In this document: piece by piece, positions 18,201 to 29,700 of the stretch
Position numbering within the stretch: the first letter of the stretch is position 1
Layout of the letters: each line of letters begins with the position of its first letter
Made by a program: the position numbers and the translations under genes
The notes under the pieces: model-generated
Databases searched by the model: none
Told to the model about the DNA's origin: nothing
What the model saw: only the letters and a program-made list of their open reading frames with translations
Assembly (NCBI RefSeq): GCF_031769215.1
Contig: NW_026782188.1
Location: forward strand, 1,240,001-1,304,000
Reading direction: 5' to 3'
Source: Ylistrum balloti
Lineage: Eukaryota
Length of the DNA: 64,000 nt

Positions 18201-19520
18201 AATTTTGAGGAGGCGACTGAGGCAAAACAACACAAATTTGTCAAACTTTCGATACAGAGATTCGCTAGCCTAAAAATACAAATAATTTCATCAGCTAATA
18301 ATTTCATATTATATCATATACTGAACCGTGTGTATAGTCAGTGTGTATATTAATTACAACATGGCATGAGGGTTATCACAAACGTTAGGGGACTTAAAAG
18401 TCCACCAGTGACGTCATCAATTTACGAGCATTCATCTGTCACCATAAAAATACTTGATAGGAAAATATATTGTGTAATATGAAGTTAACGGTGTTTGGTG
18501 CTCGTTAATATGCATGGTGGTTTCGTTGTTGTTCATTTAGGAACTTTTATCCTCACGATATATCAGTCTTAAGGTCATTGAACTTGTTTCAGGACTATCT
18601 ATGTAAATCGTCCTTTTGTTCATATTTCGCCCACGATTTACATTTGAATGTAGATGCTTTTAACATTTCGGTATTTTTGTTTTTGGATGCTAAATAACGC
18701 CCCCACACAAGCCAATTCTATCATTCACACCGTTGTACACCACGAGAACTGGAACGTGCTTTATCAATCCAACAAAAGTGGTTTGTTACCTTTGTATGGA
18801 TATATCTTACATGTGCCTGCATCACAATAGTAAGAGAAGTCTCTAAAGACTGATACTATTAATAATACTGGTAGCATTGCTATTTTTTTCAAATCTATGT
18901 GTATGTACAGTTCATCGGGCTGTTTACAACACCGAGAGGTAATATTTTTAACTGTTGACAGTTACATGAATTATCCAAAACAATCAGTTATTGACCAATT
19001 ATGCTAAGAATTAGACTTCTCTACCTGTACGGTAAGCTATACCTAGAATAAGATTACATCGCGGTCAAAAAGACGCTTTTTAGAAATCGTTTGAACGCTT
19101 GGGCGCTATATCGGCTTGACACGATTTGATATACCAGTTTCTACGGAAATAAGAGAAACAATTTTTAATTTACATTCTGGTAAAGTAGTTATTTAATCAT
19201 GATGACAGAAATGGGTTAGGTTTTCATAAACTGGTCACTATTTAATCATTAGACAGAGTAGATTGCTGACTGTAAATCTGCTATCATCCGGAGAAACTTC
19301 AAAGCAATTCTTATTTAAAGTGTACCTAGATTACGGTATAGTATTAATTAATATTAATTATGTTTCCTTTCTTATTAAAAAAATCGGAAACCCGGTCAAA
19401 ATTTGTCGCTTAGTTTTTGAGATATTTGTCGTTAAATTCACCGTTCGGAACCGGTTTGCACCTGTCGATGGAGGCTAATTAACACACTTCCCAACTTCCG
19501 GTTAACAGACCGGAAAATCC

Positions 19521-19540
19521 CGTGACGTCACAAGGGTAGC
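19521..19540 (+). promoter_or_regulatory. Left copy of a 20-bp subterminal inverted motif containing the CRE palindrome TGACGTCA
   Basis: CGTGACGTCACAAGGGTAGC; its exact reverse complement is at 23489-23508. Confidence 0.7.
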
Positions 19541-19560
19541 GCTTGGTCTAAGAAATGATA

Positions 19561-20944
19561 ATGTCGGACAGTGATAACAGCGAGTGCGAGTGGTTCGAAG
19601 ACTCAAACAATTCGGAAGAATGCAGCCTGAATTTAAGCTTTGAATCTTCTGATTACGACACGGAGGTTATAGAGAGACAAGCTGGTATTCAACCATACCA
19701 ATTTGAACCCGAGGTAGATGGTGAAAGCAGTCCATCTTCACCTGCGTCGTCTACACGTAGCGATGATAATGCTGATCGCCTGGGATCCTTAGACTGGTAT
19801 GTTCAGAGATGTTAGCTTTCACGTATGATTATTTTTTTTCCAGGAATTTTCCCTTTTCAAAATGCATCGTGCATGTTAACAAATGCGGATTTTCAGGATT
19901 TTTTCTCCACTTGCTCAACCTCACAAGTCCGACTTTGTCGAGATAATAACAGCCAATGCCTTTTTTTTGCATTTACAAATATTTGACTTTTACATAATAC
20001 CCACCCCTAAATATTTTGTGTTACATAAATTAATGTGCATAGCATTTCTTTTTACAAAGGAGAACATTTCCTGGAAACAAAGTGTATTCTTTTGCTATGT
20101 CAAATGGTACTTGTATGTACTATAAAGTGTTGAATAGAAAACTTCTAACAAGACATTTTAAAGGTATTTTCACACCAACATACTAGTGAATTATGTATAA
20201 AACACAGAAAATTTTATATGTTACAGGTGTCTTTGCGGTAACTGCAGTCTTATGCCTACCATTGAGGAGTGCAGGTGCTGTAGTGAGATACACAGTGTAC
20301 TGAACACAAAAGACGACATACCAGGGATACAGTGCATAACAGACCATCCTGGATTTGGGCCAGTCTGTTTGGATATTTATGTGCTGAGAACATCTTATTT
20401 CCAGTACAGACAACTTCATGGAGAGATACCAGAATGCCCTGAGTAAGTTATGATGTTTATCTACAGCATCAAATTTATTATTATAAAACTTGAAACATAA
20501 TAAAATAATTCATTTGTTAAGAAGATATTTTAAAAATGATGTTACAAACTTGTCTATCAAGTTACAGGTCTAAAATACTGCAAAAGAACCAATAACCAGA
20601 CAAGATAAAATAGATTTTCAATAATAAGTCAACATTTCTGAAAATCTGGTTTGGAATTGTTACACATATGTATTGTAGAGTTACTTGTGTTTACCATAAT
20701 TCACTAGTGCTTGCATCCTCCGCAGATTAATGGCAAACTTGGCATTAACAATGATTACAGAATATATTTTTCTTGTTTTATCAGGAGATACCGCTATACA
20801 GCATACAGACAATTTGTGAGATGGTGTTGGGGGTACTTGGGAAAAAGCATAAGAGTGCCATTACCTGCGTGTGCTGTGAAGATTATTAGAGAAACATTTC
20901 CTGCACCAAATGGAAATTTTAAAGGTTTTAATTTTGTGCATTAA
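19561..20944 (+). CDS. KolX-like Cys-rich protein similar to the P2X7 C-terminal ballast / Zn-coordinating cysteine domain; 3 exons, 203 aa, intact
   Basis: Exons 19561-19796, 20227-20442 and 20785-20944 total 612 nt, all GT-AG with phases 2/2; an alternative in-frame ATG lies at 19555. Protein has an acidic N-terminus with PYQFEP, then DW-CLCGNCSLMPTIEECRCCSEI, CITDHPGFGPVCLDIYVL and RYRYTAYRQFVRWCWGYLGKSIRVPLPACAVKIIRETFP. Confidence 0.88.
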
Positions 20945-21300
20945 AAATATGTGTTGAAAACATTAAAAGAATGACATGAAACAATAAAATTATAATTGAT
21001 ATCTGATTGTTGTTTTTTATTCATATATACAATTGAAACTGTAATAGGATCTGTAAGTCTCGTCATGTGACCTACTAGAACATACCTCTTAACTTGAACA
21101 ATCATAACTATGAAAACGGAGGATTACCAGTAGGTACGTTTTTAAAAACTCCTTGGGAAATGTGCATTTTGTCGAAATTGAAAATACTTTTCTTCTATAA
21201 GACTACTACCTAAAACGTCAGTTGGTACACAGAAGTAAAGTAAAACAGACTTGCAGACCATATTAAAAAACAGATGAAAATTCATGTACATGTATGTATT

Positions 21301-23304
21301 TTAAATGTTCATGTTAAATCTTGATTCCATCAATGCGACAGCTTCCATTTTTACAGGTCTGACAAAATCACTACAGAGTGGTGGGGGTTGGTCTTTAAGT
21401 AGCATATCCTCCACTTGCATCGTACTTTTTTCTGCCACTTGTAGCACTTCTGCCATCAGTTCATGTACATAGTCTGTAAGATAAAAAGTACATATACAAG
21501 TACACTGGTTTTATTATTTTTTCCAATCACTATTACACAAAATCTGACACTATTGCTAGTAAAGACTTTAAATGTTTTGTATACATGGACATATTTTCCT
21601 GCAACTAAAATGCAAGTTGTTAATTGAAGAATCATGTACTGCAATATATAGAATACTGAACCTAACCTAAAATATTGAACTCGTCTTCATATGCAACATA
21701 ATACTTACCAAATGTTTGTTTTGTTTTGACTTTTCTGACAGTGTATCCACCTTTCTTCTGTTTAGGGTAGATTATCTTAAACATTTTCTCCCCAGCAGAT
21801 GTCATGGCTTGTTCTCTTCTCACATTTTCATTGTGGTGAAGTGCAGCTAGAATCACCCTATTCAAAGAGATGCAACAATATTTAAACTTTCCTGATTAAG
21901 TATCATCAATATCTTAAGAATTAAGACTGGCTGCCTAAATCTTTTACATACTCATTTTAACATATCTTACATCTAGCTACAACACTAAATCTCTTTTAAC
22001 ATTGCAATATTCACCACAGGAGTTTTGAGACAGGTAGACTACTAGTGAATAATGATATTTCCACAACCTGTTGATGATGTTAGATCTTGAGACAGATATA
22101 CATATACGATCAACTTGTCTGTACAAATTGATGTCTAAAGAAATAATAGTCTTATGAGAATCATGTGATCATATACCTGCACAACATTCCATTGAATGAA
22201 AAGCCATGTATTTTAGGGGCAAACTGGTTAACTGTTGAGTGGTACCCTTCTAGTTCTGAAGTTTGGTGATGTGTTGATAGCATGGGAATGTCCTTTTTCA
22301 TTTGTGGTGATGTCAACATCAGTTCTAGCTTCTCCATTACTTTACTCTCTGAAAAGTGAAAGTGAGGATTTCAAATGATGAAGTAAAAATATAATATGGG
22401 ATCATAAGGAATTTAGAACACGAATATTAATTCCATGCTAAGAACAAGAAACTAAAGATACCATTTTCCTGGATGTGCTTTTCATTCAGGTGAAAAATGT
22501 CATTGCTAAAGAAATTAGGCACTTAAAATGTTTTTAAGCAAGTGATAAATGTCATTCGTAATTTAGTTATGATTTGAATTATTGATACGTCACCAATTTC
22601 GAACCAAATGAATAAGTAAGCAAGTTAAAGGTAGGATACACAATAATTGAGTCAATGCCATAACAGGAAAAATACCTGGTTTTATCCATTTCTTCTTCCT
22701 TTCCTGTGTTCTCAAGTCATCATGCAGACAGCAAGGAAACAGATCTGAAGATACCTCGCATACACTGAAACATTTACTGGGAAAAGGTTTATTAAATGCT
22801 TAATAGGAGTATTGTCCACTAAGGAAGGCTGCATTACTCATTACCTTTTCTACTCAGATACTACTATAACTTATATGATATACATAGGCCCTAGATCTTC
22901 ATGTATTATGTAATAATTACCCTTCTGTTCTCTCTTTTTGCGAAAGCAGTCCGTGGTCTTTTGACAGGCGTTTCCTCTACGTTGGTGCAGCCTTTGTTAA
23001 TCGTTGGCACAGCATCTTTTATTAGCGTTTTCTTTTTCGGTGGTGTACGTCCCATTGATTGAAGAAATCTGTACTGCATCGGGTAGCAGTCCTCACCGAA
23101 ATGTTCCGAACACAAAACTGAATGTTTTGTTGGCCCGTCCCACAAATCCCTTTTCCTCCGCACAAATGCAGTCCAAACTTTGCATATTTCCGGTCTGTCT
23201 AATGGGAAAAAATGAAGTGAAACACCGTCTAAAGTGGTGTTTCCACATCCATACGCTACACATCTCTTCCCACGTGAACGTTTGTTGGTCGGAGTCGCTT
23301 CCAT
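21301..23304 (-). pseudogene. Kolobok transposase gene with internal deletion; THAP exon and four C-terminal exons retained
   Basis: Exon 22921-23304 is a THAP domain (CVAYGC...LHFFP...W...LCSEHF...DAVPTI). Exons 22676-22764 (DLFPCCLHDDL...KKKWIKP), 22177-22348 (QTSELEGYHSTVNQFAPK), 21709-21857 (VILAALHHNEN...PKQKKGG) and 21301-21473 (PPPLCSDFVRPVKMEAVALMESRF) splice in frame with each other. The THAP exon ends in phase 0 and the next exon needs phase 2; only 156 bp separate them. Confidence 0.85.
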
Positions 23305-23488
23305 AGTTAAGCTAATACTTCGAATTTCGCACGTTTTGAATAAAAATAAATATCACTTGATACGCACAAATATGGTAGGATATAAATACAGGACGAGAAG
23401 TATGAAGATTAAACAACCAAACGTCTGTTTCACATATTTTCGACAGTCTACACGCGAAAGTTACCTGGCATGGCGGGTCGTCCCAAAT

Positions 23489-23508
23489 GCTACCCTTGTG
23501 ACGTCACG
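23489..23508 (-). promoter_or_regulatory. Right copy of the 20-bp subterminal inverted motif
   Basis: GCTACCCTTGTGACGTCACG, the exact reverse complement of 19521-19540. Confidence 0.7.
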
Positions 23509-24514
23509 AGCAAATAGAGCCTCGATTTGATGTGAGAGCGGTTTATTCAAAGGTATGTTTTTCGGTTTTTGCCGTAAAGCATAAAAACTATAAAACTGAA
23601 ATGATTTTTTTATATATATTTATGAACGTCTATATACATACCAATTAACAACTATAAATAAACATGTAATCTAGGTACACTTTAAGTTGGTTAAAAGGTG
23701 ACCAGCTAGACACAATGGACTGGTCATCGTTAGCATGGATACACGTGATTCTGATAAACAAATCCATTTGTTCACCACAGCAACAGATACCTGTGCAACA
23801 CTTTAATTCACCAACATATTGGCACAATCCGACATCACAGCCATGATCTTTGGTATGTTGATCACTTTTTAACACGAGATATGTCGACCTGGTGAATGCA
23901 GGGCAGATCGAAGTAGAATTTGGAATTCTGTTGTGCAAAATTTAACGTCCTGAATATACATATAAATCTGCCTCATGACCATTAACACCAGAGGAAACAA
24001 CCTGTGACAGAGGTGGTGTATTTCCCTAGGTGATGGCTTACATTGTATGAAATGTTCTGCTGCCAATTAGTCCAGTCACATTTATCTCCCAAGGCGTGAC
24101 ATTTACTTTGATAGCAGATATTAATATTTTCGAGTAACTTTTAGAGCAACACATTGATCACGTGACAATTATATATCAGACACACATAAAACATTCTTAT
24201 AATTAATGTCAAGAATTACTGACGCTACAAGAAGTTAACGGTAGACCAGACATCTGCCTGGAAGGTCAGCGGGATTTATTGGTTTTGTCGTATTAGGTAC
24301 GTCGTCATCAGAACAGCCATTGTTTCAGTTTATTGTATTGAAAAAAGATGACGCAAAATACTTCATAAATTTTATTCTTAGGTTTGCATAAGTTAAAAAC
24401 TACATTGGCATGAAATATGTTTGCTGAGAAACATACCAGTATTGTACATCTGTAACAGTAGATCGCGTGATCAAGGTTGGGGTCAGAGAGTCGGGTTCAA
24501 TATTTAAGGGAAAG

Positions 24515-25200
24515 CTGCAGATAACCCGAGTTACAGATAGTGGGGTCCAACACACAGAGAATTGGTGAATTAACCCCTGTCCCTCATTCCCTACACAGAT
24601 ACAGAGACTGAGTTAGAGATAGTGGGGTCAAATACAGAGAAGAGGTGAAGTTAACCCCTGTCCTTATTCTCTAGACAGATGGAGACTGAGTTAGAGATAG
24701 TGGGGTCCAATACACAGAGAAGAGGTGAAGTTAACTGAGTTAGAGATAGTGGGGTCCAATACACAGAGAAGATGTGAAGTTAACCCCTGTCCTTATTCTC
24801 TAGACAGATGGAGACTGAATTAGAGATAGTGGGGTCCAATACACAGAGAAGATGTGAAGTTAACCCCTGTCCTTATTCTCTAGACAGATGGAGACTGAGT
24901 TAGAGATAGTGGGGTCAAATACACAGAGAATAGGTGAAGTTAACCTCTGTCCCTCTTTCCCTAGGCAGATGGAAACTGAGTTAGAGATAGTGGGGTCCAA
25001 TACACAGAGAAGAGGTGAAGTTAACCCCTGTCCCTCTTTCCCTAGGCAGATGGAAACTGAGTTAGAGATAGTGGGGTCCAATACACAGAGAAGAGGTGAA
25101 GTTAACTCCTGTCCCTACTCCCTCAGTACAGATCTCCAAGTAGATCCACAGAGACAAGAGGTCCAAAACACTGGAAACAGGGTAATTTTACCCCTGTCCC
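24515..25200. repeat. 78-81-bp minisatellite downstream of FAM98
   Basis: Unit atggagactgagttagagatagtggggtccaatacacagagaagaggtgaagttaacccctgtcc...; anchors at 24888/24969 (81 bp) and 24611/24689 (78 bp). Confidence 0.95.
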
Positions 25201-26700
25201 AATTCTAAATACACACAAGAGACTGTAATAGGTCTGATAGGGGGGTCCAAAACAAAAGGTGTCATGAAGCATTTGTTCATATATAATAATATTAAAATAC
25301 ATATATATGTATTTCTATTTGCAATAGCAGAGAGGTAAAAACTAGCACTAAAATTCATTCACTAACCATGAGGCTTTTAACATCTTAGCTATCACACTTT
25401 TTACAATATTATCAAGTATGATTAGGACAAAATAGCACTTTCTACATTTCATAGTGTCACTTTACACCTGGGAAGAATATAAAACAGAAACATTTCAACA
25501 ACACTTTGGTTAGAAATGGCCGGATAGAGCTTATAATATTGCAGCAGTAATATTGAGCTCAAAACTTTTCATCCAATCAAAGAATTGAAGACTCAAAATT
25601 CAAAACTTTTTTAGCATGTAAAATCATACTAATTCAGTTTTCCAAGAGCTTTCTTGTAAAAGATAAACACAAAATGCATTCAGTTTATTAAATAAGTTAA
25701 TATCAAATAACAGAGTGTATTGAAATAAAAAACACTGAACTGTACACAGAGGGAAATGCCAGTATTGTGAATTCTCTGTTATAAACAATTTATTGCATAC
25801 CCTTAGGTCTGAGTATAAGTAACACTTTGTATAATAATTTCTTACTTCTATACAAATAACAGTGAGCTCAAACAACATTCTAGTACTTTAGTGGTAAGAT
25901 TTGAGGTAATGTCGCCCAATAAATGGGCGGTGATAAAAACATTCACTAACAATACATATCTTTACATTTATATGTAAATATAAACTAGACCACAGTATCT
26001 CTGTAAACAAACAAACATTAGAGGATATATCAGACACAGATGGCAGGTTAAAGCTTCTGTTGTAAATATATCTGTTGGGAACTTAATACCAGTCCTATAT
26101 TATAAACTTCAAGTTATAAGACAATAAATGTTAAAAGAAACTATAAATTAGATTGCAAGATTAACTGATAAAGACCACAAACTCTTGCCTCCAAACAACC
26201 GTCCTATATTTCACTATCAATTACCTAAACCTATTGCTCTAATGCCCAATACCGGGATATTTTTAGACCTTAATTCCTTCAAATATTAAAAATATATAAT
26301 TCTAGTGACAGGATATAGCTACATAATTCACACCATAGCTTTCCCATCACCTTGTTGTACCTGTCAGTTTATAAATATGTTTACAATGTAAGAAGTTGAA
26401 GCTAGAGAATCTAAAATAAGGCTATTTATATCTAGTAATACAACTCCATTTCTAACAAGACTAGGTTTTATGGAATTCAACAGATGCTGTCTTGCCTGTG
26501 ATTATACAGGCATCATTGGCTTGTCTTGTTGCAGGGATCACTAGTATACACTGTACCACTTTATGTATTATACCAAACACCACATAACACCAATTATGCT
26601 TTCAAAGCGCTCAATCTCTTACTCATCCATTCCAACAATTCATCAAAACAAATGACCAATCAGAAGCTTGATTACATTCATTATAAAATATTGCAATCAA

Positions 26701-29700
26701 TCAGTATCCTCCACCTCGTCCTCTGCCACCTCGACCACTTCCTTTTCTTCCTCTACCCCCTCGTCCTCCACCCCCTCCTCCTCCTTGATAATTATCACTT
26801 TGTCCACCTTGATGATAACCTCCTCCTCCTCCTTGGCCACCATAGCCACCACCCTGGTTACCATAGCCTCCTCCTTGGCCACCATAGCCACCACCCTGGT
26901 TACCATAGCCTCCTCCTTGGCCACCATAGCCACCACCCTGGTTACCATAGCCTCCTCCTTGACCACCATAGCCACCACCTTGGTTACCATAGCCACCGCC
27001 CTGGTTACCATAGCCACCCCCACCTCTCCCTTGGTTGTAACCACCGCCACCTTGACCCCAGTTGCCACCTTGTTGGTTGGGATTTGCATCACCCCATCCT
27101 CCTTGCACCTTTCCTCCTCTTCCTCCACCTCCACCTCCACCTCCTCGACCCCGACCACCTCCATGTCCACCTAATACAAAAGTAATCATGTGATCTGATG
27201 AAGATAAGAACATAAAGAAACACTGTGTTGTGTCGCAGTTTCATTTTACCAAAGTTACTGCACAATCATAATTTCCATATCTAAACCATCCTAGATTTGT
27301 TTTATGTTGTTAGGGCTGAAGCAAGAGATCAGTTTTAGTTATGCTGAATATTACGATGTCTTGCAGAAAATGCTGTCATACATTGGAAGTGTTTACACAT
27401 CAATAACAATGATTCCAATATGTTTGCAAATTTGCTAAAACTGCAAAGTTTCTACAGTGCTGTCATTTAACCAGCTCTGATATCTATACATAGTTATCAG
27501 ATTTTTTTTCTGTGTGTATTTTGTATATTTCTTTGTTATTTGTGATGACATTAATGGATAGTCTTTAAGTACATTTAACAACATATCTATACACTGTTGG
27601 CACTCACTTTGTGGTCGCTGTGGTGCCGCCTCCCTCTTCATAAAGGACGGCATTTCTGGCGGAGGTGGCTCTAGTTCCCATGCCCGACCTCCTCTGTCTG
27701 GTACCTACCAGCAACAAAATGCACTGTTGTTTCAAAGGTTTCAAACTGTGAACTACATTCATTGAAATTAAAATGAACATTTTCCATACCATCTTTTAAC
27801 TTTAAAATAATATATACAAAATATTACAAATGTTGTAATCAATTCTCACAACAAATTGGACAGTTTTCTGACACTGGTTACCTCCCCTCATTCTGCCTAC
27901 CTTTGGTATGAGGACTCTGTTTATGGCACACTTTGTTTTCTCCCTGGCATCACCACTGCTAGTCTTCTCTAGGCGTGTCAAGTCTTGAGAAATAACATAC
28001 AGAATGATAAGGACTAATAGACCTGACTATAATACTGTCTAGTCTTAGAAAATAGCAAACATGGAGGACTACATCTGTTGGTACTAAGAGGAGATAACAA
28101 AACAGTCTTGTCGGTGAAAACAATGGAGGACTGTTTTTGTTGGTAGTGAGAGGAAATAACAAAACAGTCTTGTCGGAGAAAACAATGGGGGACTGTTTTT
28201 GTTGGTAGTGAGAGGAAATAACAAAACAGTCTTGTCGGAGAAAACAATGGGGGACTGTTTTTGTTGGTAGTGAGAGGAAATAACAAAACAGTCTTGTCGG
28301 AGAAAACAATGGGGGACTGTTTTTGTTGGTAGTGAGAGGAAATAACAAAACAGTCTTGTCGGAGAAAACAACGGGGGACTGTTTTTGTTGGTAGTGAGAG
28401 GAAATAACAAAACAGTCTTGTCGGAGAAAACAACGGGGGACTGTTTTTGTTGGTAGTGAGAGGAAATAACAAACCAGTCTTGTCGGAGAAAACAACGGGG
28501 GACTGTTTTTGTTGGTAGTGAGAGGAAATAACAAAACAGTCTTGTCGGAGAAAACAATGGGGGACTGTTTTTGTTGGTAGTGAGAGGAAATAACAAAACA
28601 GTCTTGTCGGAGAAAACAACGGGGGACTGTATTTGTTGGTAGTGAGAAGAAATAACTAACCAGTCTTGTCGGAGAAAACAACGGGGGACTGTTTTTGTTG
28701 GTAGTGAGAGGAAATAACAAAACAGTCTTGTCGGAGAAAACAATGTAGTTAGATGACATTCAGGTACTTTACATTTGGCTGTATTCATGACTGATAGAAT
28801 TTCACAATATTTGCTGTCAATAAAGAAAATGGGGCATTATATCATGAAACAATCTTACCCTAAGAAACAACCAACAAAGACGACTGTTAATTGTGAGAGT
28901 TAAGAGAGAACAGGTGTCTTTGGAAATGACATATGATCATTGGATATATAAAGAGAAAATGAATTTCTAATCTGAAGCCAACGCTAAACTTCTTAAACAC
29001 CTATCTAATTGCATTTTCATATACAAATATTTTCATCAAATCTCTACCACATACTCACCGTCCCTAGCTGAAAGGATTTGAGCAACTCCTATGGCTGGTT
29101 TTGTCTGAAGACTTTTTCGAACGGGTTGATATACTGCAGCAATATCATTTTCTTTTTGCTAAAAAGAAAGAATAATGAATCTAAGTCCCGTTCTTCAATG
29201 ATGTATATATTATGTGTGTGGTGATCTTGTTTAAGTCTGTAAGCACAACAAGATCAAATATGATCAAAGGGAGGTAATATTGTTGTAATAGCAAATATAC
29301 CTAATAATGACCAATACGAAACCATATCATACCTGATAATCCTCAGGAGACCTTGTGAAGTCATTTCATAGTTTACTTTCTTGCATAGACACTTTCAAAA
29401 TGGAAATCATGATAAAGTCGGAGAATCAAAATAACGACCAATGCTCAGACAGACAATACTGATGTAAAATTTAAAAGCGGTGATACTCAGTTTTATGTTC
29501 ACATAATGTTTAAACTTTCAAGGACATTTTTTAAATGGAAATCATGAGAAAAAGACATACATCTACCCTAATTTGAAAATATAAAACTATATTTAGTGTA
29601 TGTAAATCACATGGTGAAGTGTTCTGGGAAATATATCTACATACAAAGTAGATGATTTTTAGGACATTTGGTATTACATTACACAACAAAGCAACCTAGA

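What the first reader, a model, noticed from the sequence alone, without database searches (positions are those of the whole stretch)
21301..23304. Transposase deletion leaves a THAP-only product, a possible KP-like repressor
Seen: the THAP exon (128 codons) is followed after 156 bp by late exons containing the putative last catalytic Glu (TSELEGYHS). The zinc-finger region and both catalytic Asp regions are missing. Splicing to the next acceptor is out of frame and gives 142 aa; read-through gives 132 aa. Either way only the DNA-binding domain is made. Established: deleted P-element derivatives such as KP keep THAP and repress transposition. Inference: this element may be a THAP repressor plus intact KolX module that regulates its family. 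I do not know of this being described for Kolobok.
Basis: partly seen in the sequence, partly recalled or inferred. Interest (0 to 1): 0.7.

Follow-up and report, generated by a model that had tools for sequence, protein, structure and literature searches.

The report
Internally deleted Kolobok transposon copy
One copy of a young scallop DNA transposon has lost 3.1 kb of its transposase gene, so it can only encode the DNA-binding THAP part; this is how such elements usually decay, and nothing yet shows that the leftover protein represses its family.

Summary
Window 19315-23685 is a complete-ended Kolobok (Kol0 lineage) element with TTAA duplications, AG...CT termini, an intact KolX gene and a truncated transposase gene.

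- **Deletion.** Against full-length sister copies that are 99.5-99.7% identical, it lacks 3,091 bp. The junction is at 22744/22745 with 1 nt of microhomology.
- **What is lost.** The intron 1 acceptor, exons 2-6 and most of exon 7, which is residues 129-595 of the 781-aa transposase. That covers the zinc-finger region, both putative catalytic Asp motifs and the DxxH signature.
- **What can be made.** Every canonical splice choice, or read-through, gives a THAP-only product of 128-142 aa.

The KP-like repressor reading is not supported:

- The junction occurs once in the 648-Mb assembly.
- No contig of four other sequencing runs bridges it.
- No RNA run was on offer.
- No protein from this copy turned up in the databases, although all sister copies have RefSeq models.
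- The product has no evident dimerisation segment.
- Its stop codon lies upstream of remaining introns.

A second, independent deletion copy on contig C566 is annotated as a 152-aa THAP-only protein. Most likely this is an ordinary non-autonomous deletion derivative.

The parts
19315..19318 (.). Left TTAA target-site duplication
   Evidence: BLAST matches to the sister copies stop here.
19319..19334 (+). Left 16-bp terminal inverted repeat, starting AG
   Evidence: Inverted repeat I3, 100% complementary; end alignment.
19521..19546 (+). Left copy of the 26-bp subterminal inverted box holding the TGACGTCA palindrome, 9 bp upstream of the KolX ATG
   Evidence: Inverted repeat I1. It is the only word shared by both ends besides the TIR. 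It is conserved in the C34 mosaic. A role as promoter or binding site is inferred only.
19555..20944 (+). KolX gene, three exons (19555-19796, 20227-20442, 20785-20944), 205 codons, P2X7 ballast-like
   Evidence: Pfam P2RX7_C, E 2.3e-09 on exon 3. Splice sites were read from the sequence. No window-private substitution falls in its exons.
21301..21473 (-). Transposase exon 10, including the stop codon
   Evidence: Exon model, identical to RefSeq protein P0165 residues 726-781 apart from polymorphisms.
21709..21857 (-). Transposase exon 9
22177..22348 (-). Transposase exon 8 with the SELEGYH motif (putative catalytic Glu); carries a window-private Met-to-Ile change
22676..22745 (-). Remaining 70-nt 3' tail of exon 7 (from LFPCCLH onward)
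22744..22745 (.). Deletion junction: 3,091 bp missing, 1-nt microhomology
   Evidence: The 30-mer across it occurs once in the genome.
22746..22920 (-). 5' remnant of intron 1; the natural acceptor is deleted, and cryptic acceptors give exon starts at 22818, 22776 and 22764
22921..23304 (-). Transposase exon 1: THAP zinc finger (C15, C20, C65, H68, AVPTI box) plus a conserved basic tail
   Evidence: Pfam THAP, E 8.8e-15. The fold matches THAP1, THAP2 and the P-element THAP domain. The protein is identical to exon 1 of P0165 and P0155.
23483..23508 (-). Right copy of the 26-bp subterminal box, 179 bp upstream of the THAP ATG
23666..23681 (-). Right 16-bp terminal inverted repeat
23682..23685 (.). 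Right TTAA target-site duplication

Best explanation
Window 19315-23685 is a non-autonomous, internally deleted copy of a young Kol0-lineage Kolobok DNA transposon. The genome is almost certainly that of the scallop Ylistrum balloti.

A single 3,091-bp deletion with 1 nt of microhomology removed the catalytic core of the 10-exon, 781-codon THAP-DDE transposase gene. This is the footprint expected of interrupted gap repair or end joining after excision or a break; that origin is inferred, not shown. Both termini, the TTAA duplications, the subterminal boxes, the KolX gene and the THAP exon are intact.

The copy cannot move itself, but the intact transposase genes elsewhere in the genome could in principle mobilise it. 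If it is transcribed from its unchanged upstream region, it can only yield a 128-142-aa THAP-only peptide. Its stop codon lies upstream of three remaining introns, so nonsense-mediated decay is likely (inferred). It is most probably a neutral by-product, not an evolved regulator.
For: - **Deletion mapped** against the sister copies, which are 99.5-99.7% identical over shared columns.
- **Gene model.** All ten exons are open with GT-AG introns in copies C698 and C339. Exon by exon they match RefSeq proteins of 781 aa on contigs of exactly the lengths of C339 and C698.
- **Homology.** Bivalve homologues align to exons 1 and 5-10.
- **Kolobok hallmarks.** TTAA duplications, AG termini, THAP and KolX/P2RX7_C are all present (PMC9587614, PMC6004289).
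- **Junction is unique** in the assembly.
- **A distinct locus.** The copy carries 8 substitutions not seen in the five sister copies of the assembly, lying on both sides of the junction, which fits a separate locus.
- **Deletions recur in this family.** A second derivative with different, blunt breakpoints exists on C566.
- **Products.** All canonical splice options give 128-142 aa.
Against: - No long-read or PCR confirmation of the junction was possible.
- Contigs of four other runs carry only the full-length continuation at 22745. Such contigs drop rare variants, so this shows neither absence nor presence.
- Transcription and nonsense-mediated decay are untested.
- A THAP-only peptide could still bind the element's ends.
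- Two independent derivatives both keep the THAP exon. That is also expected simply because the exon lies within 770 bp of the terminus.
Confidence: 0.8

Rival explanations
1. KP-like repressor. The copy is transcribed, and its nuclear THAP-only peptide occupies transposase-binding sites at Kolobok ends and dampens transposition of the family.
For: - The THAP domain is complete and folds like THAP1 and the P-element THAP domain.
- The basic motif after it is conserved among bivalve homologues.
- The upstream region matches the gene-bearing sister copies at all but three positions that vary among those copies; none is private to this copy.
- Intact 781-aa transposase genes coexist in the genome, so there is something to repress.
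- A sister derivative is annotated as a 152-aa THAP-only protein.
- KP sets the precedent (PMC7776569).
Against: - Single copy, with no amplification.
- Not seen in four other runs.
- No RNA evidence.
- No protein from this copy turned up in the databases.
- The natural acceptor is deleted, so any product depends on cryptic sites or read-through.
- The premature stop lies upstream of further introns.
- No coiled coil or zipper: only a 12-residue helix follows the THAP domain, whereas KP dimerises (PMC7776569).
- No repeated subterminal binding motif was found.
Confidence: 0.1
2. Assembly artefact. The locus really holds a full-length copy, and the 3.09-kb segment was lost by mis-assembly.
For: Contigs from four runs show only the full-length continuation on both sides of 22745. 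The family has several near-identical copies that could confuse an assembler.
Against: - The two breakpoints share only 1 nt, so there is no repeat to collapse on.
- The copy has its own substitutions on both sides of the junction.
- A sister copy has a different clean deletion.
- Short-read contigs are expected to drop a single-copy branch inside a roughly six-copy repeat.
Confidence: 0.05
3. THAP plus C-terminal fusion. Use of the AG two bases inside exon 8 (exon start 22346) would join exon 1 in frame to exons 8-10. The product would be about 290 aa and would lack the catalytic Asp residues.
For: The frame arithmetic works: one search gives an open tail through exon 8.
Against: The strong native acceptor two bases upstream gives a stop after 3 codons. 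No Ylistrum protein of 122-388 aa with these exons is on record.
Confidence: 0.03

Closest known systems
Kol0 lineage of the Kolobok superfamily (type Kolobok-1_XT; Kapitonov and Jurka; Kojima and Bao 2022, PMC9587614)
   Same: TTAA target-site duplications, 5'-AG...CT-3' termini, and a transposase with THAP, DDE, the DxxH signature and an H2CH region in the full-length sister copies. A second gene, KolX, has the P2X7 ballast fold.
   Different: This copy lacks transposase residues 129-595. The family here is a young, low-copy scallop family with a 10-exon transposase gene convergent with KolX. I could not compare it with Repbase consensus sequences.
KP element of the Drosophila P element (207-aa type II repressor; PMC7776569 and references 62 and 64 therein)
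   Same: An internal deletion of a THAP-bearing transposase gene that leaves the N-terminal DNA-binding domain as the only product.
   Different: KP belongs to a different superfamily (P, 8-bp duplications). It keeps the leucine-zipper dimerisation domain and has been shown to bind P ends and repress. By my recollection, not checked here, it is also amplified to many copies in natural strains. The window copy is single, has no evident dimerisation segment, has lost its splice acceptor, and is untested.
Sister deletion copy on contig C566 (RefSeq XP_060078185.1, 152 aa)
   Same: Same family at 99.7% identity, with complete ends, TTAA duplications, an intact THAP exon and KolX, and a THAP-only coding capacity.
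   Different: An independent 3,725-bp blunt deletion that keeps intron 1 and 71 nt of exon 2. The natural exon 1 to exon 2 splice is therefore usable, and RefSeq models it as a gene.
Ordinary internally deleted non-autonomous DNA transposons (Ds, deleted P, hobo and mariner copies)
   Same: Intact ends, a heterogeneous internal deletion with little or no microhomology, and coexistence with autonomous copies.
   Different: Nothing essential; this is the category it fits best.

Membership tests
Kolobok superfamily | TTAA target-site duplication | tested here: met
   TTAA lies at both ends of the window copy and of C566, at the left of C578 and at the right of C185. C339 and C698 lack it.
Kolobok superfamily | Termini 5'-RR...YY-3' (distinguishes it from piggyBac) | tested here: met
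   The 16-bp TIR begins AG and ends CT. The criterion comes from PMC9587614 and PMC6004289.
Kolobok superfamily | DDE transposase with the C/DxxH signature and H2CH region, homologous to Kolobok transposases | tested here: inconclusive
   The full-length sisters have GDGRCD, VTDRH, DVWH, SELEGYH and the H...H...C..H stretch, and 3,247 homologues. None of the database names says Kolobok, Pfam gives only sub-threshold Mutator/MULE hits, and no Repbase comparison was possible. In the window copy this region is deleted.
Kolobok superfamily | N-terminal THAP domain (C2CH, P/W/F, AVPTI box) | tested here: met
   Pfam E 8.8e-15; invariant C15, C20, C65, H68, P34, W44 and F69; fold match to THAP1.
Kol0 lineage | Second gene KolX with the P2X7 cytoplasmic ballast domain | tested here: met
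   Pfam P2RX7_C, E 2.3e-09, above the gathering score.
KP-type truncated-transposase repressor | Retains the site-specific DNA-binding domain only | tested here: met
   All canonical products are THAP-only, 128-142 aa.
KP-type truncated-transposase repressor | Retains a dimerisation (leucine-zipper) segment | tested here: inconclusive
   The AlphaFold model (pLDDT 72.5) shows a disordered linker and a single 12-residue helix at 120-131. No zipper is evident, but no oligomer test was run.
KP-type truncated-transposase repressor | The same deletion present in many copies or at high frequency | tested here: not met
   The junction 30-mer occurs once in 648 Mb, and no bridging contig exists in four runs.
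KP-type truncated-transposase repressor | Expressed, and represses transposition | not testable with these tools
   No RNA run was on offer; it needs an excision assay.
P superfamily | 8-bp duplications and a P-type transposase core | tested here: not met
   The duplication is the 4-bp TTAA, and no Tnp_P_element hit appears on the exons or on P0165.
piggyBac | TTAA duplications with CC..GG termini and a DDE_Tnp_1_7 transposase | tested here: not met
   The termini are AG...CT, and there is no piggyBac Pfam hit.

The most novel reading that the evidence does not exclude
The two independent deletion copies of this young family (the window copy and the C566 copy annotated as a 152-aa protein) both supply nuclear THAP-only peptides. 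These peptides would compete with the 781-aa transposase for the element's ends. That would be the first KP-type self-repression described outside the P superfamily, in Kolobok.
Probability: 0.1. Interest if true: 0.55.

Novelty: new member of a known kind. Interest (0 to 1): 0.22.

Why it matters
As it stands, this is a routine example of how cut-and-paste transposons decay, useful mainly for annotation. It shows that Ylistrum balloti carries a very young Kol0 Kolobok family that may still be active. Two of its 781-aa transposase genes are intact, and the copies differ by only 0.1-0.5%.

If a THAP-only product were shown to repress, the KP principle would extend to a second superfamily. The scallop would then offer a natural set of autonomous, KolX-bearing and THAP-only copies for testing it.

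Tried and rejected
- **RNA evidence.** The look-up of sequencing runs offered no RNA run, so transcription, isoforms and nonsense-mediated decay could not be examined.
- **Reads.** Only Logan contigs of four DNA runs could be laid. They neither bridge the junction nor can they exclude it.
- **Pfam on the catalytic exons.** Only sub-threshold Mutator, MULE and ISL3 hits, so the family assignment rests on hallmarks and literature criteria.
- **Repeated binding motifs.** A search of the terminal 240 bp of both ends found nothing beyond the TIR and the TGACGTCA box.
- **The look-up of encoding contigs** for the 152-aa protein returned nothing.
- **Short THAP 'proteins'.** P0156-P0159 end just past the conserved KRENRR motif that closes exon 1. 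I take them for read-through calls of exon 1 on short contigs, not evidence for natural THAP-only proteins.
- **Spliced model.** The joined transposase sequence was not assembled or sent to any search. Exons were searched and compared one by one by reference, and the model was checked exon by exon against RefSeq protein P0165.
- **Rejected families.** P superfamily and piggyBac membership (see the membership tests).

Full report
**What is there.** The finding's span (21301-23304, minus strand) is the remnant of a transposase gene inside a complete element at window 19315-23685. The element has TTAA on both sides and 16-bp terminal inverted repeats that begin AG. A second 26-bp inverted box holding the TGACGTCA palindrome lies about 175-205 bp in from each tip, just upstream of each gene's start. 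Two convergent genes are present:
- On the plus strand, a three-exon KolX gene (19555-20944) whose last exon hits Pfam P2RX7_C (E 2.3e-09).
- On the minus strand, the THAP exon (22921-23304, 128 codons, Pfam THAP E 8.8e-15), followed by late transposase exons.

**Mapping the deletion.** A search of the window's own genome found four long sister copies (contigs C698, C339, C578, C185) that are 99.5-99.7% identical over shared columns. Each has about 3.09 kb extra at exactly one point. Alignment places the deletion at L031 3928-7018. It is 3,091 bp long, with the junction at window 22744/22745 and one shared base at the breakpoints.

**Gene model.** In the full-length copy I derived a 10-exon model totalling 2,346 nt, or 781 codons. 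All introns are GT-AG and every exon is open in the phase required. Each exon was searched or compared by reference. Three lines confirm the model independently:
- Bivalve homologues align to exons 1 and 5-10.
- A RefSeq protein of exactly 781 aa (P0165, XP_060072400.1, Ylistrum balloti) sits on a contig whose length equals that of C339. It matches all ten exon peptides in order, with only the polymorphisms of that copy.
- A second 781-aa model lies on a contig with the length of C698, and truncated models lie on contigs with the lengths of C578 and C185.

The genome is therefore almost certainly that of the scallop Ylistrum balloti.

**What the deletion removes.** It takes out the last 84 bp of intron 1 with its acceptor, exons 2-6 and the first ~189 nt of exon 7. 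That is residues 129-595 of the protein. This stretch contains:
- the CxxC...CxxC region;
- the GDGRCD and VTDRH motifs (the two putative catalytic Asp);
- the DVWH signature, the C/DxxH motif shared by Kolobok, hAT, P, MuDR and Dada (PMC9587614);
- most of the H2CH region (PMC6004289).

The last 70 nt of exon 7 remain, as do exons 8-10. Exon 8 carries SELEGYH, the putative catalytic Glu. Its numbers are reproduced: 128 codons, an acceptor 156 nt downstream giving 142 aa, and read-through giving 132 aa. Other acceptor-like sites give 128-139 aa, and a skip to the native exon 8 acceptor gives 131 aa. Only a weak AG two bases inside exon 8 would restore the frame.

**Family context.** The family is small and young.
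- The six copies compared differ by 0.14-0.50%.
- C698 and C339 have all ten exons open. C578 lacks the first 12 nt of the coding sequence. C185 is cut by a contig end.
- A second derivative on C566 has complete ends and TTAA. It carries an independent, blunt 3,725-bp deletion that keeps intron 1 and 71 nt of exon 2. RefSeq models it as a 152-aa THAP-only protein (XP_060078185.1), whose sequence is exon 1 plus 24 residues.
- Older copies at 91-96% identity and several fragments also exist.

The window's junction 30-mer occurs once in the 648-Mb assembly. The deletion is therefore not amplified.

**Other individuals and expression.** No RNA run was on offer. Nine DNA runs hold the sequence, and I laid four of them as contigs. 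In all four, the contig on either side of 22745 runs on into the full-length sequence, and none bridges the junction. Because these are short-read contigs of a roughly six-copy repeat, a single-copy branch would be dropped, so this is no proof of absence. The single-copy right-flank contig continues leftwards from the TTAA at 23682 into sequence found nowhere in the assembly. The locus therefore differs structurally between individuals, which I could not resolve. No protein from the window copy turned up in the databases in any length class searched, although all sister copies have RefSeq models.

**Is it an artefact?** It is unlikely.
- The breakpoints share one base, so there is nothing to collapse on.
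- The copy has eight substitutions not seen in the five sister copies of the assembly, on both sides of the junction. One of them, at 22801, also appears in contigs of other individuals.
- A sister copy shows that clean internal deletions occur in this family.

Only long reads or PCR can settle it.

**Mechanism.** The best-supported reading is an ordinary non-autonomous deletion derivative, produced by interrupted gap repair or end joining (inferred from the footprint). It keeps everything needed in cis and could be mobilised by the intact transposases (inferred).

The THAP-only peptide is plausible as a product. The region upstream of the THAP ATG carries no change private to this copy. The fold is a bona fide THAP finger, with best structural matches to THAP1, THAP2 and the P-element THAP domain. 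A basic motif conserved among homologues follows it.

The points against a KP-like role are:
- single copy;
- no expression evidence;
- loss of the natural acceptor;
- a stop codon upstream of three introns, which invites nonsense-mediated decay (inferred);
- no evident dimerisation segment, whereas KP keeps a leucine zipper and dimerises (PMC7776569).

That two derivatives keep THAP and KolX follows from geometry. Both genes start within a few hundred bases of the termini, so internal deletions spare them.

**Comparison and novelty.** The element meets the Kolobok criteria that I could test: TTAA, RR/YY termini, THAP, and KolX for the Kol0 lineage. P and piggyBac membership fail. KolX as a P2X7 ballast homologue is already published (PMC9587614). 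I found no paper describing truncated-transposase repressors in Kolobok. The evidence here does not establish one either. Verdict: a new member of a known kind, of low interest. There is a modest chance, about 0.1, that THAP-only derivatives of this family act as repressors.

Noticed in passing
G000:C566:1174219-1177952 (L034 505-4234): A second, independent deletion derivative of the same family: 3,725 bp missing, blunt junction, complete ends and TTAA. It keeps intron 1 and 71 nt of exon 2, and RefSeq annotates it as a 152-aa THAP-only protein (XP_060078185.1).
   Followed up: partly
L032 (C339) and L031 (C698) element ends: The two copies with intact 781-codon genes lack TTAA flanks. C339 has complete termini flanked by CACCT and GATAT. 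In C698 the right TIR lacks its last 4 nt. The reason is unknown.
   Followed up: partly
window 23682-24100 and 18900-19219: In four other runs, the single-copy right-flank contig runs leftwards from the TTAA at 23682 into sequence absent from the whole assembly. The left-flank contig stops at 19219, where a high-copy repeat begins (depth 650-2150 against about 16). The locus is structurally polymorphic.
   Followed up: partly
L036 (G000:C34:497800-499300): A mosaic of the element's right end. Blocks identical to window 23150-23660 alternate with blocks replaced by copies of a ~22-nt motif that also forms a tandem array beside it.
   Followed up: no
window 22346-22348: A tandem AG two bases inside exon 8 would put exons 8-10 in frame with the THAP exon, giving THAP plus about 160 C-terminal residues. 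The native acceptor gives a stop after three codons.
   Followed up: partly
window 22921-22995 (end of exon 1): A basic motif (KRxRxAFxKRENRR) at the very end of the THAP exon is conserved in bivalve homologues. It may be a nuclear localisation signal; the AlphaFold model makes it a short helix.
   Followed up: no
L008/L009/L010 (C695, C825, C558): An older subfamily (91-96% identity) shares a 524-bp gap over KolX exon 2. C695 and C825 are the same locus because their flanks match, while C558 is an independent insertion.
   Followed up: partly
window 24860-25208 and 26526-27213: Tandem repeat ORFs of about 35 aa, and a glycine-rich GGYGNQGGG repeat ORF on the minus strand, lie downstream of the element.
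   Followed up: no
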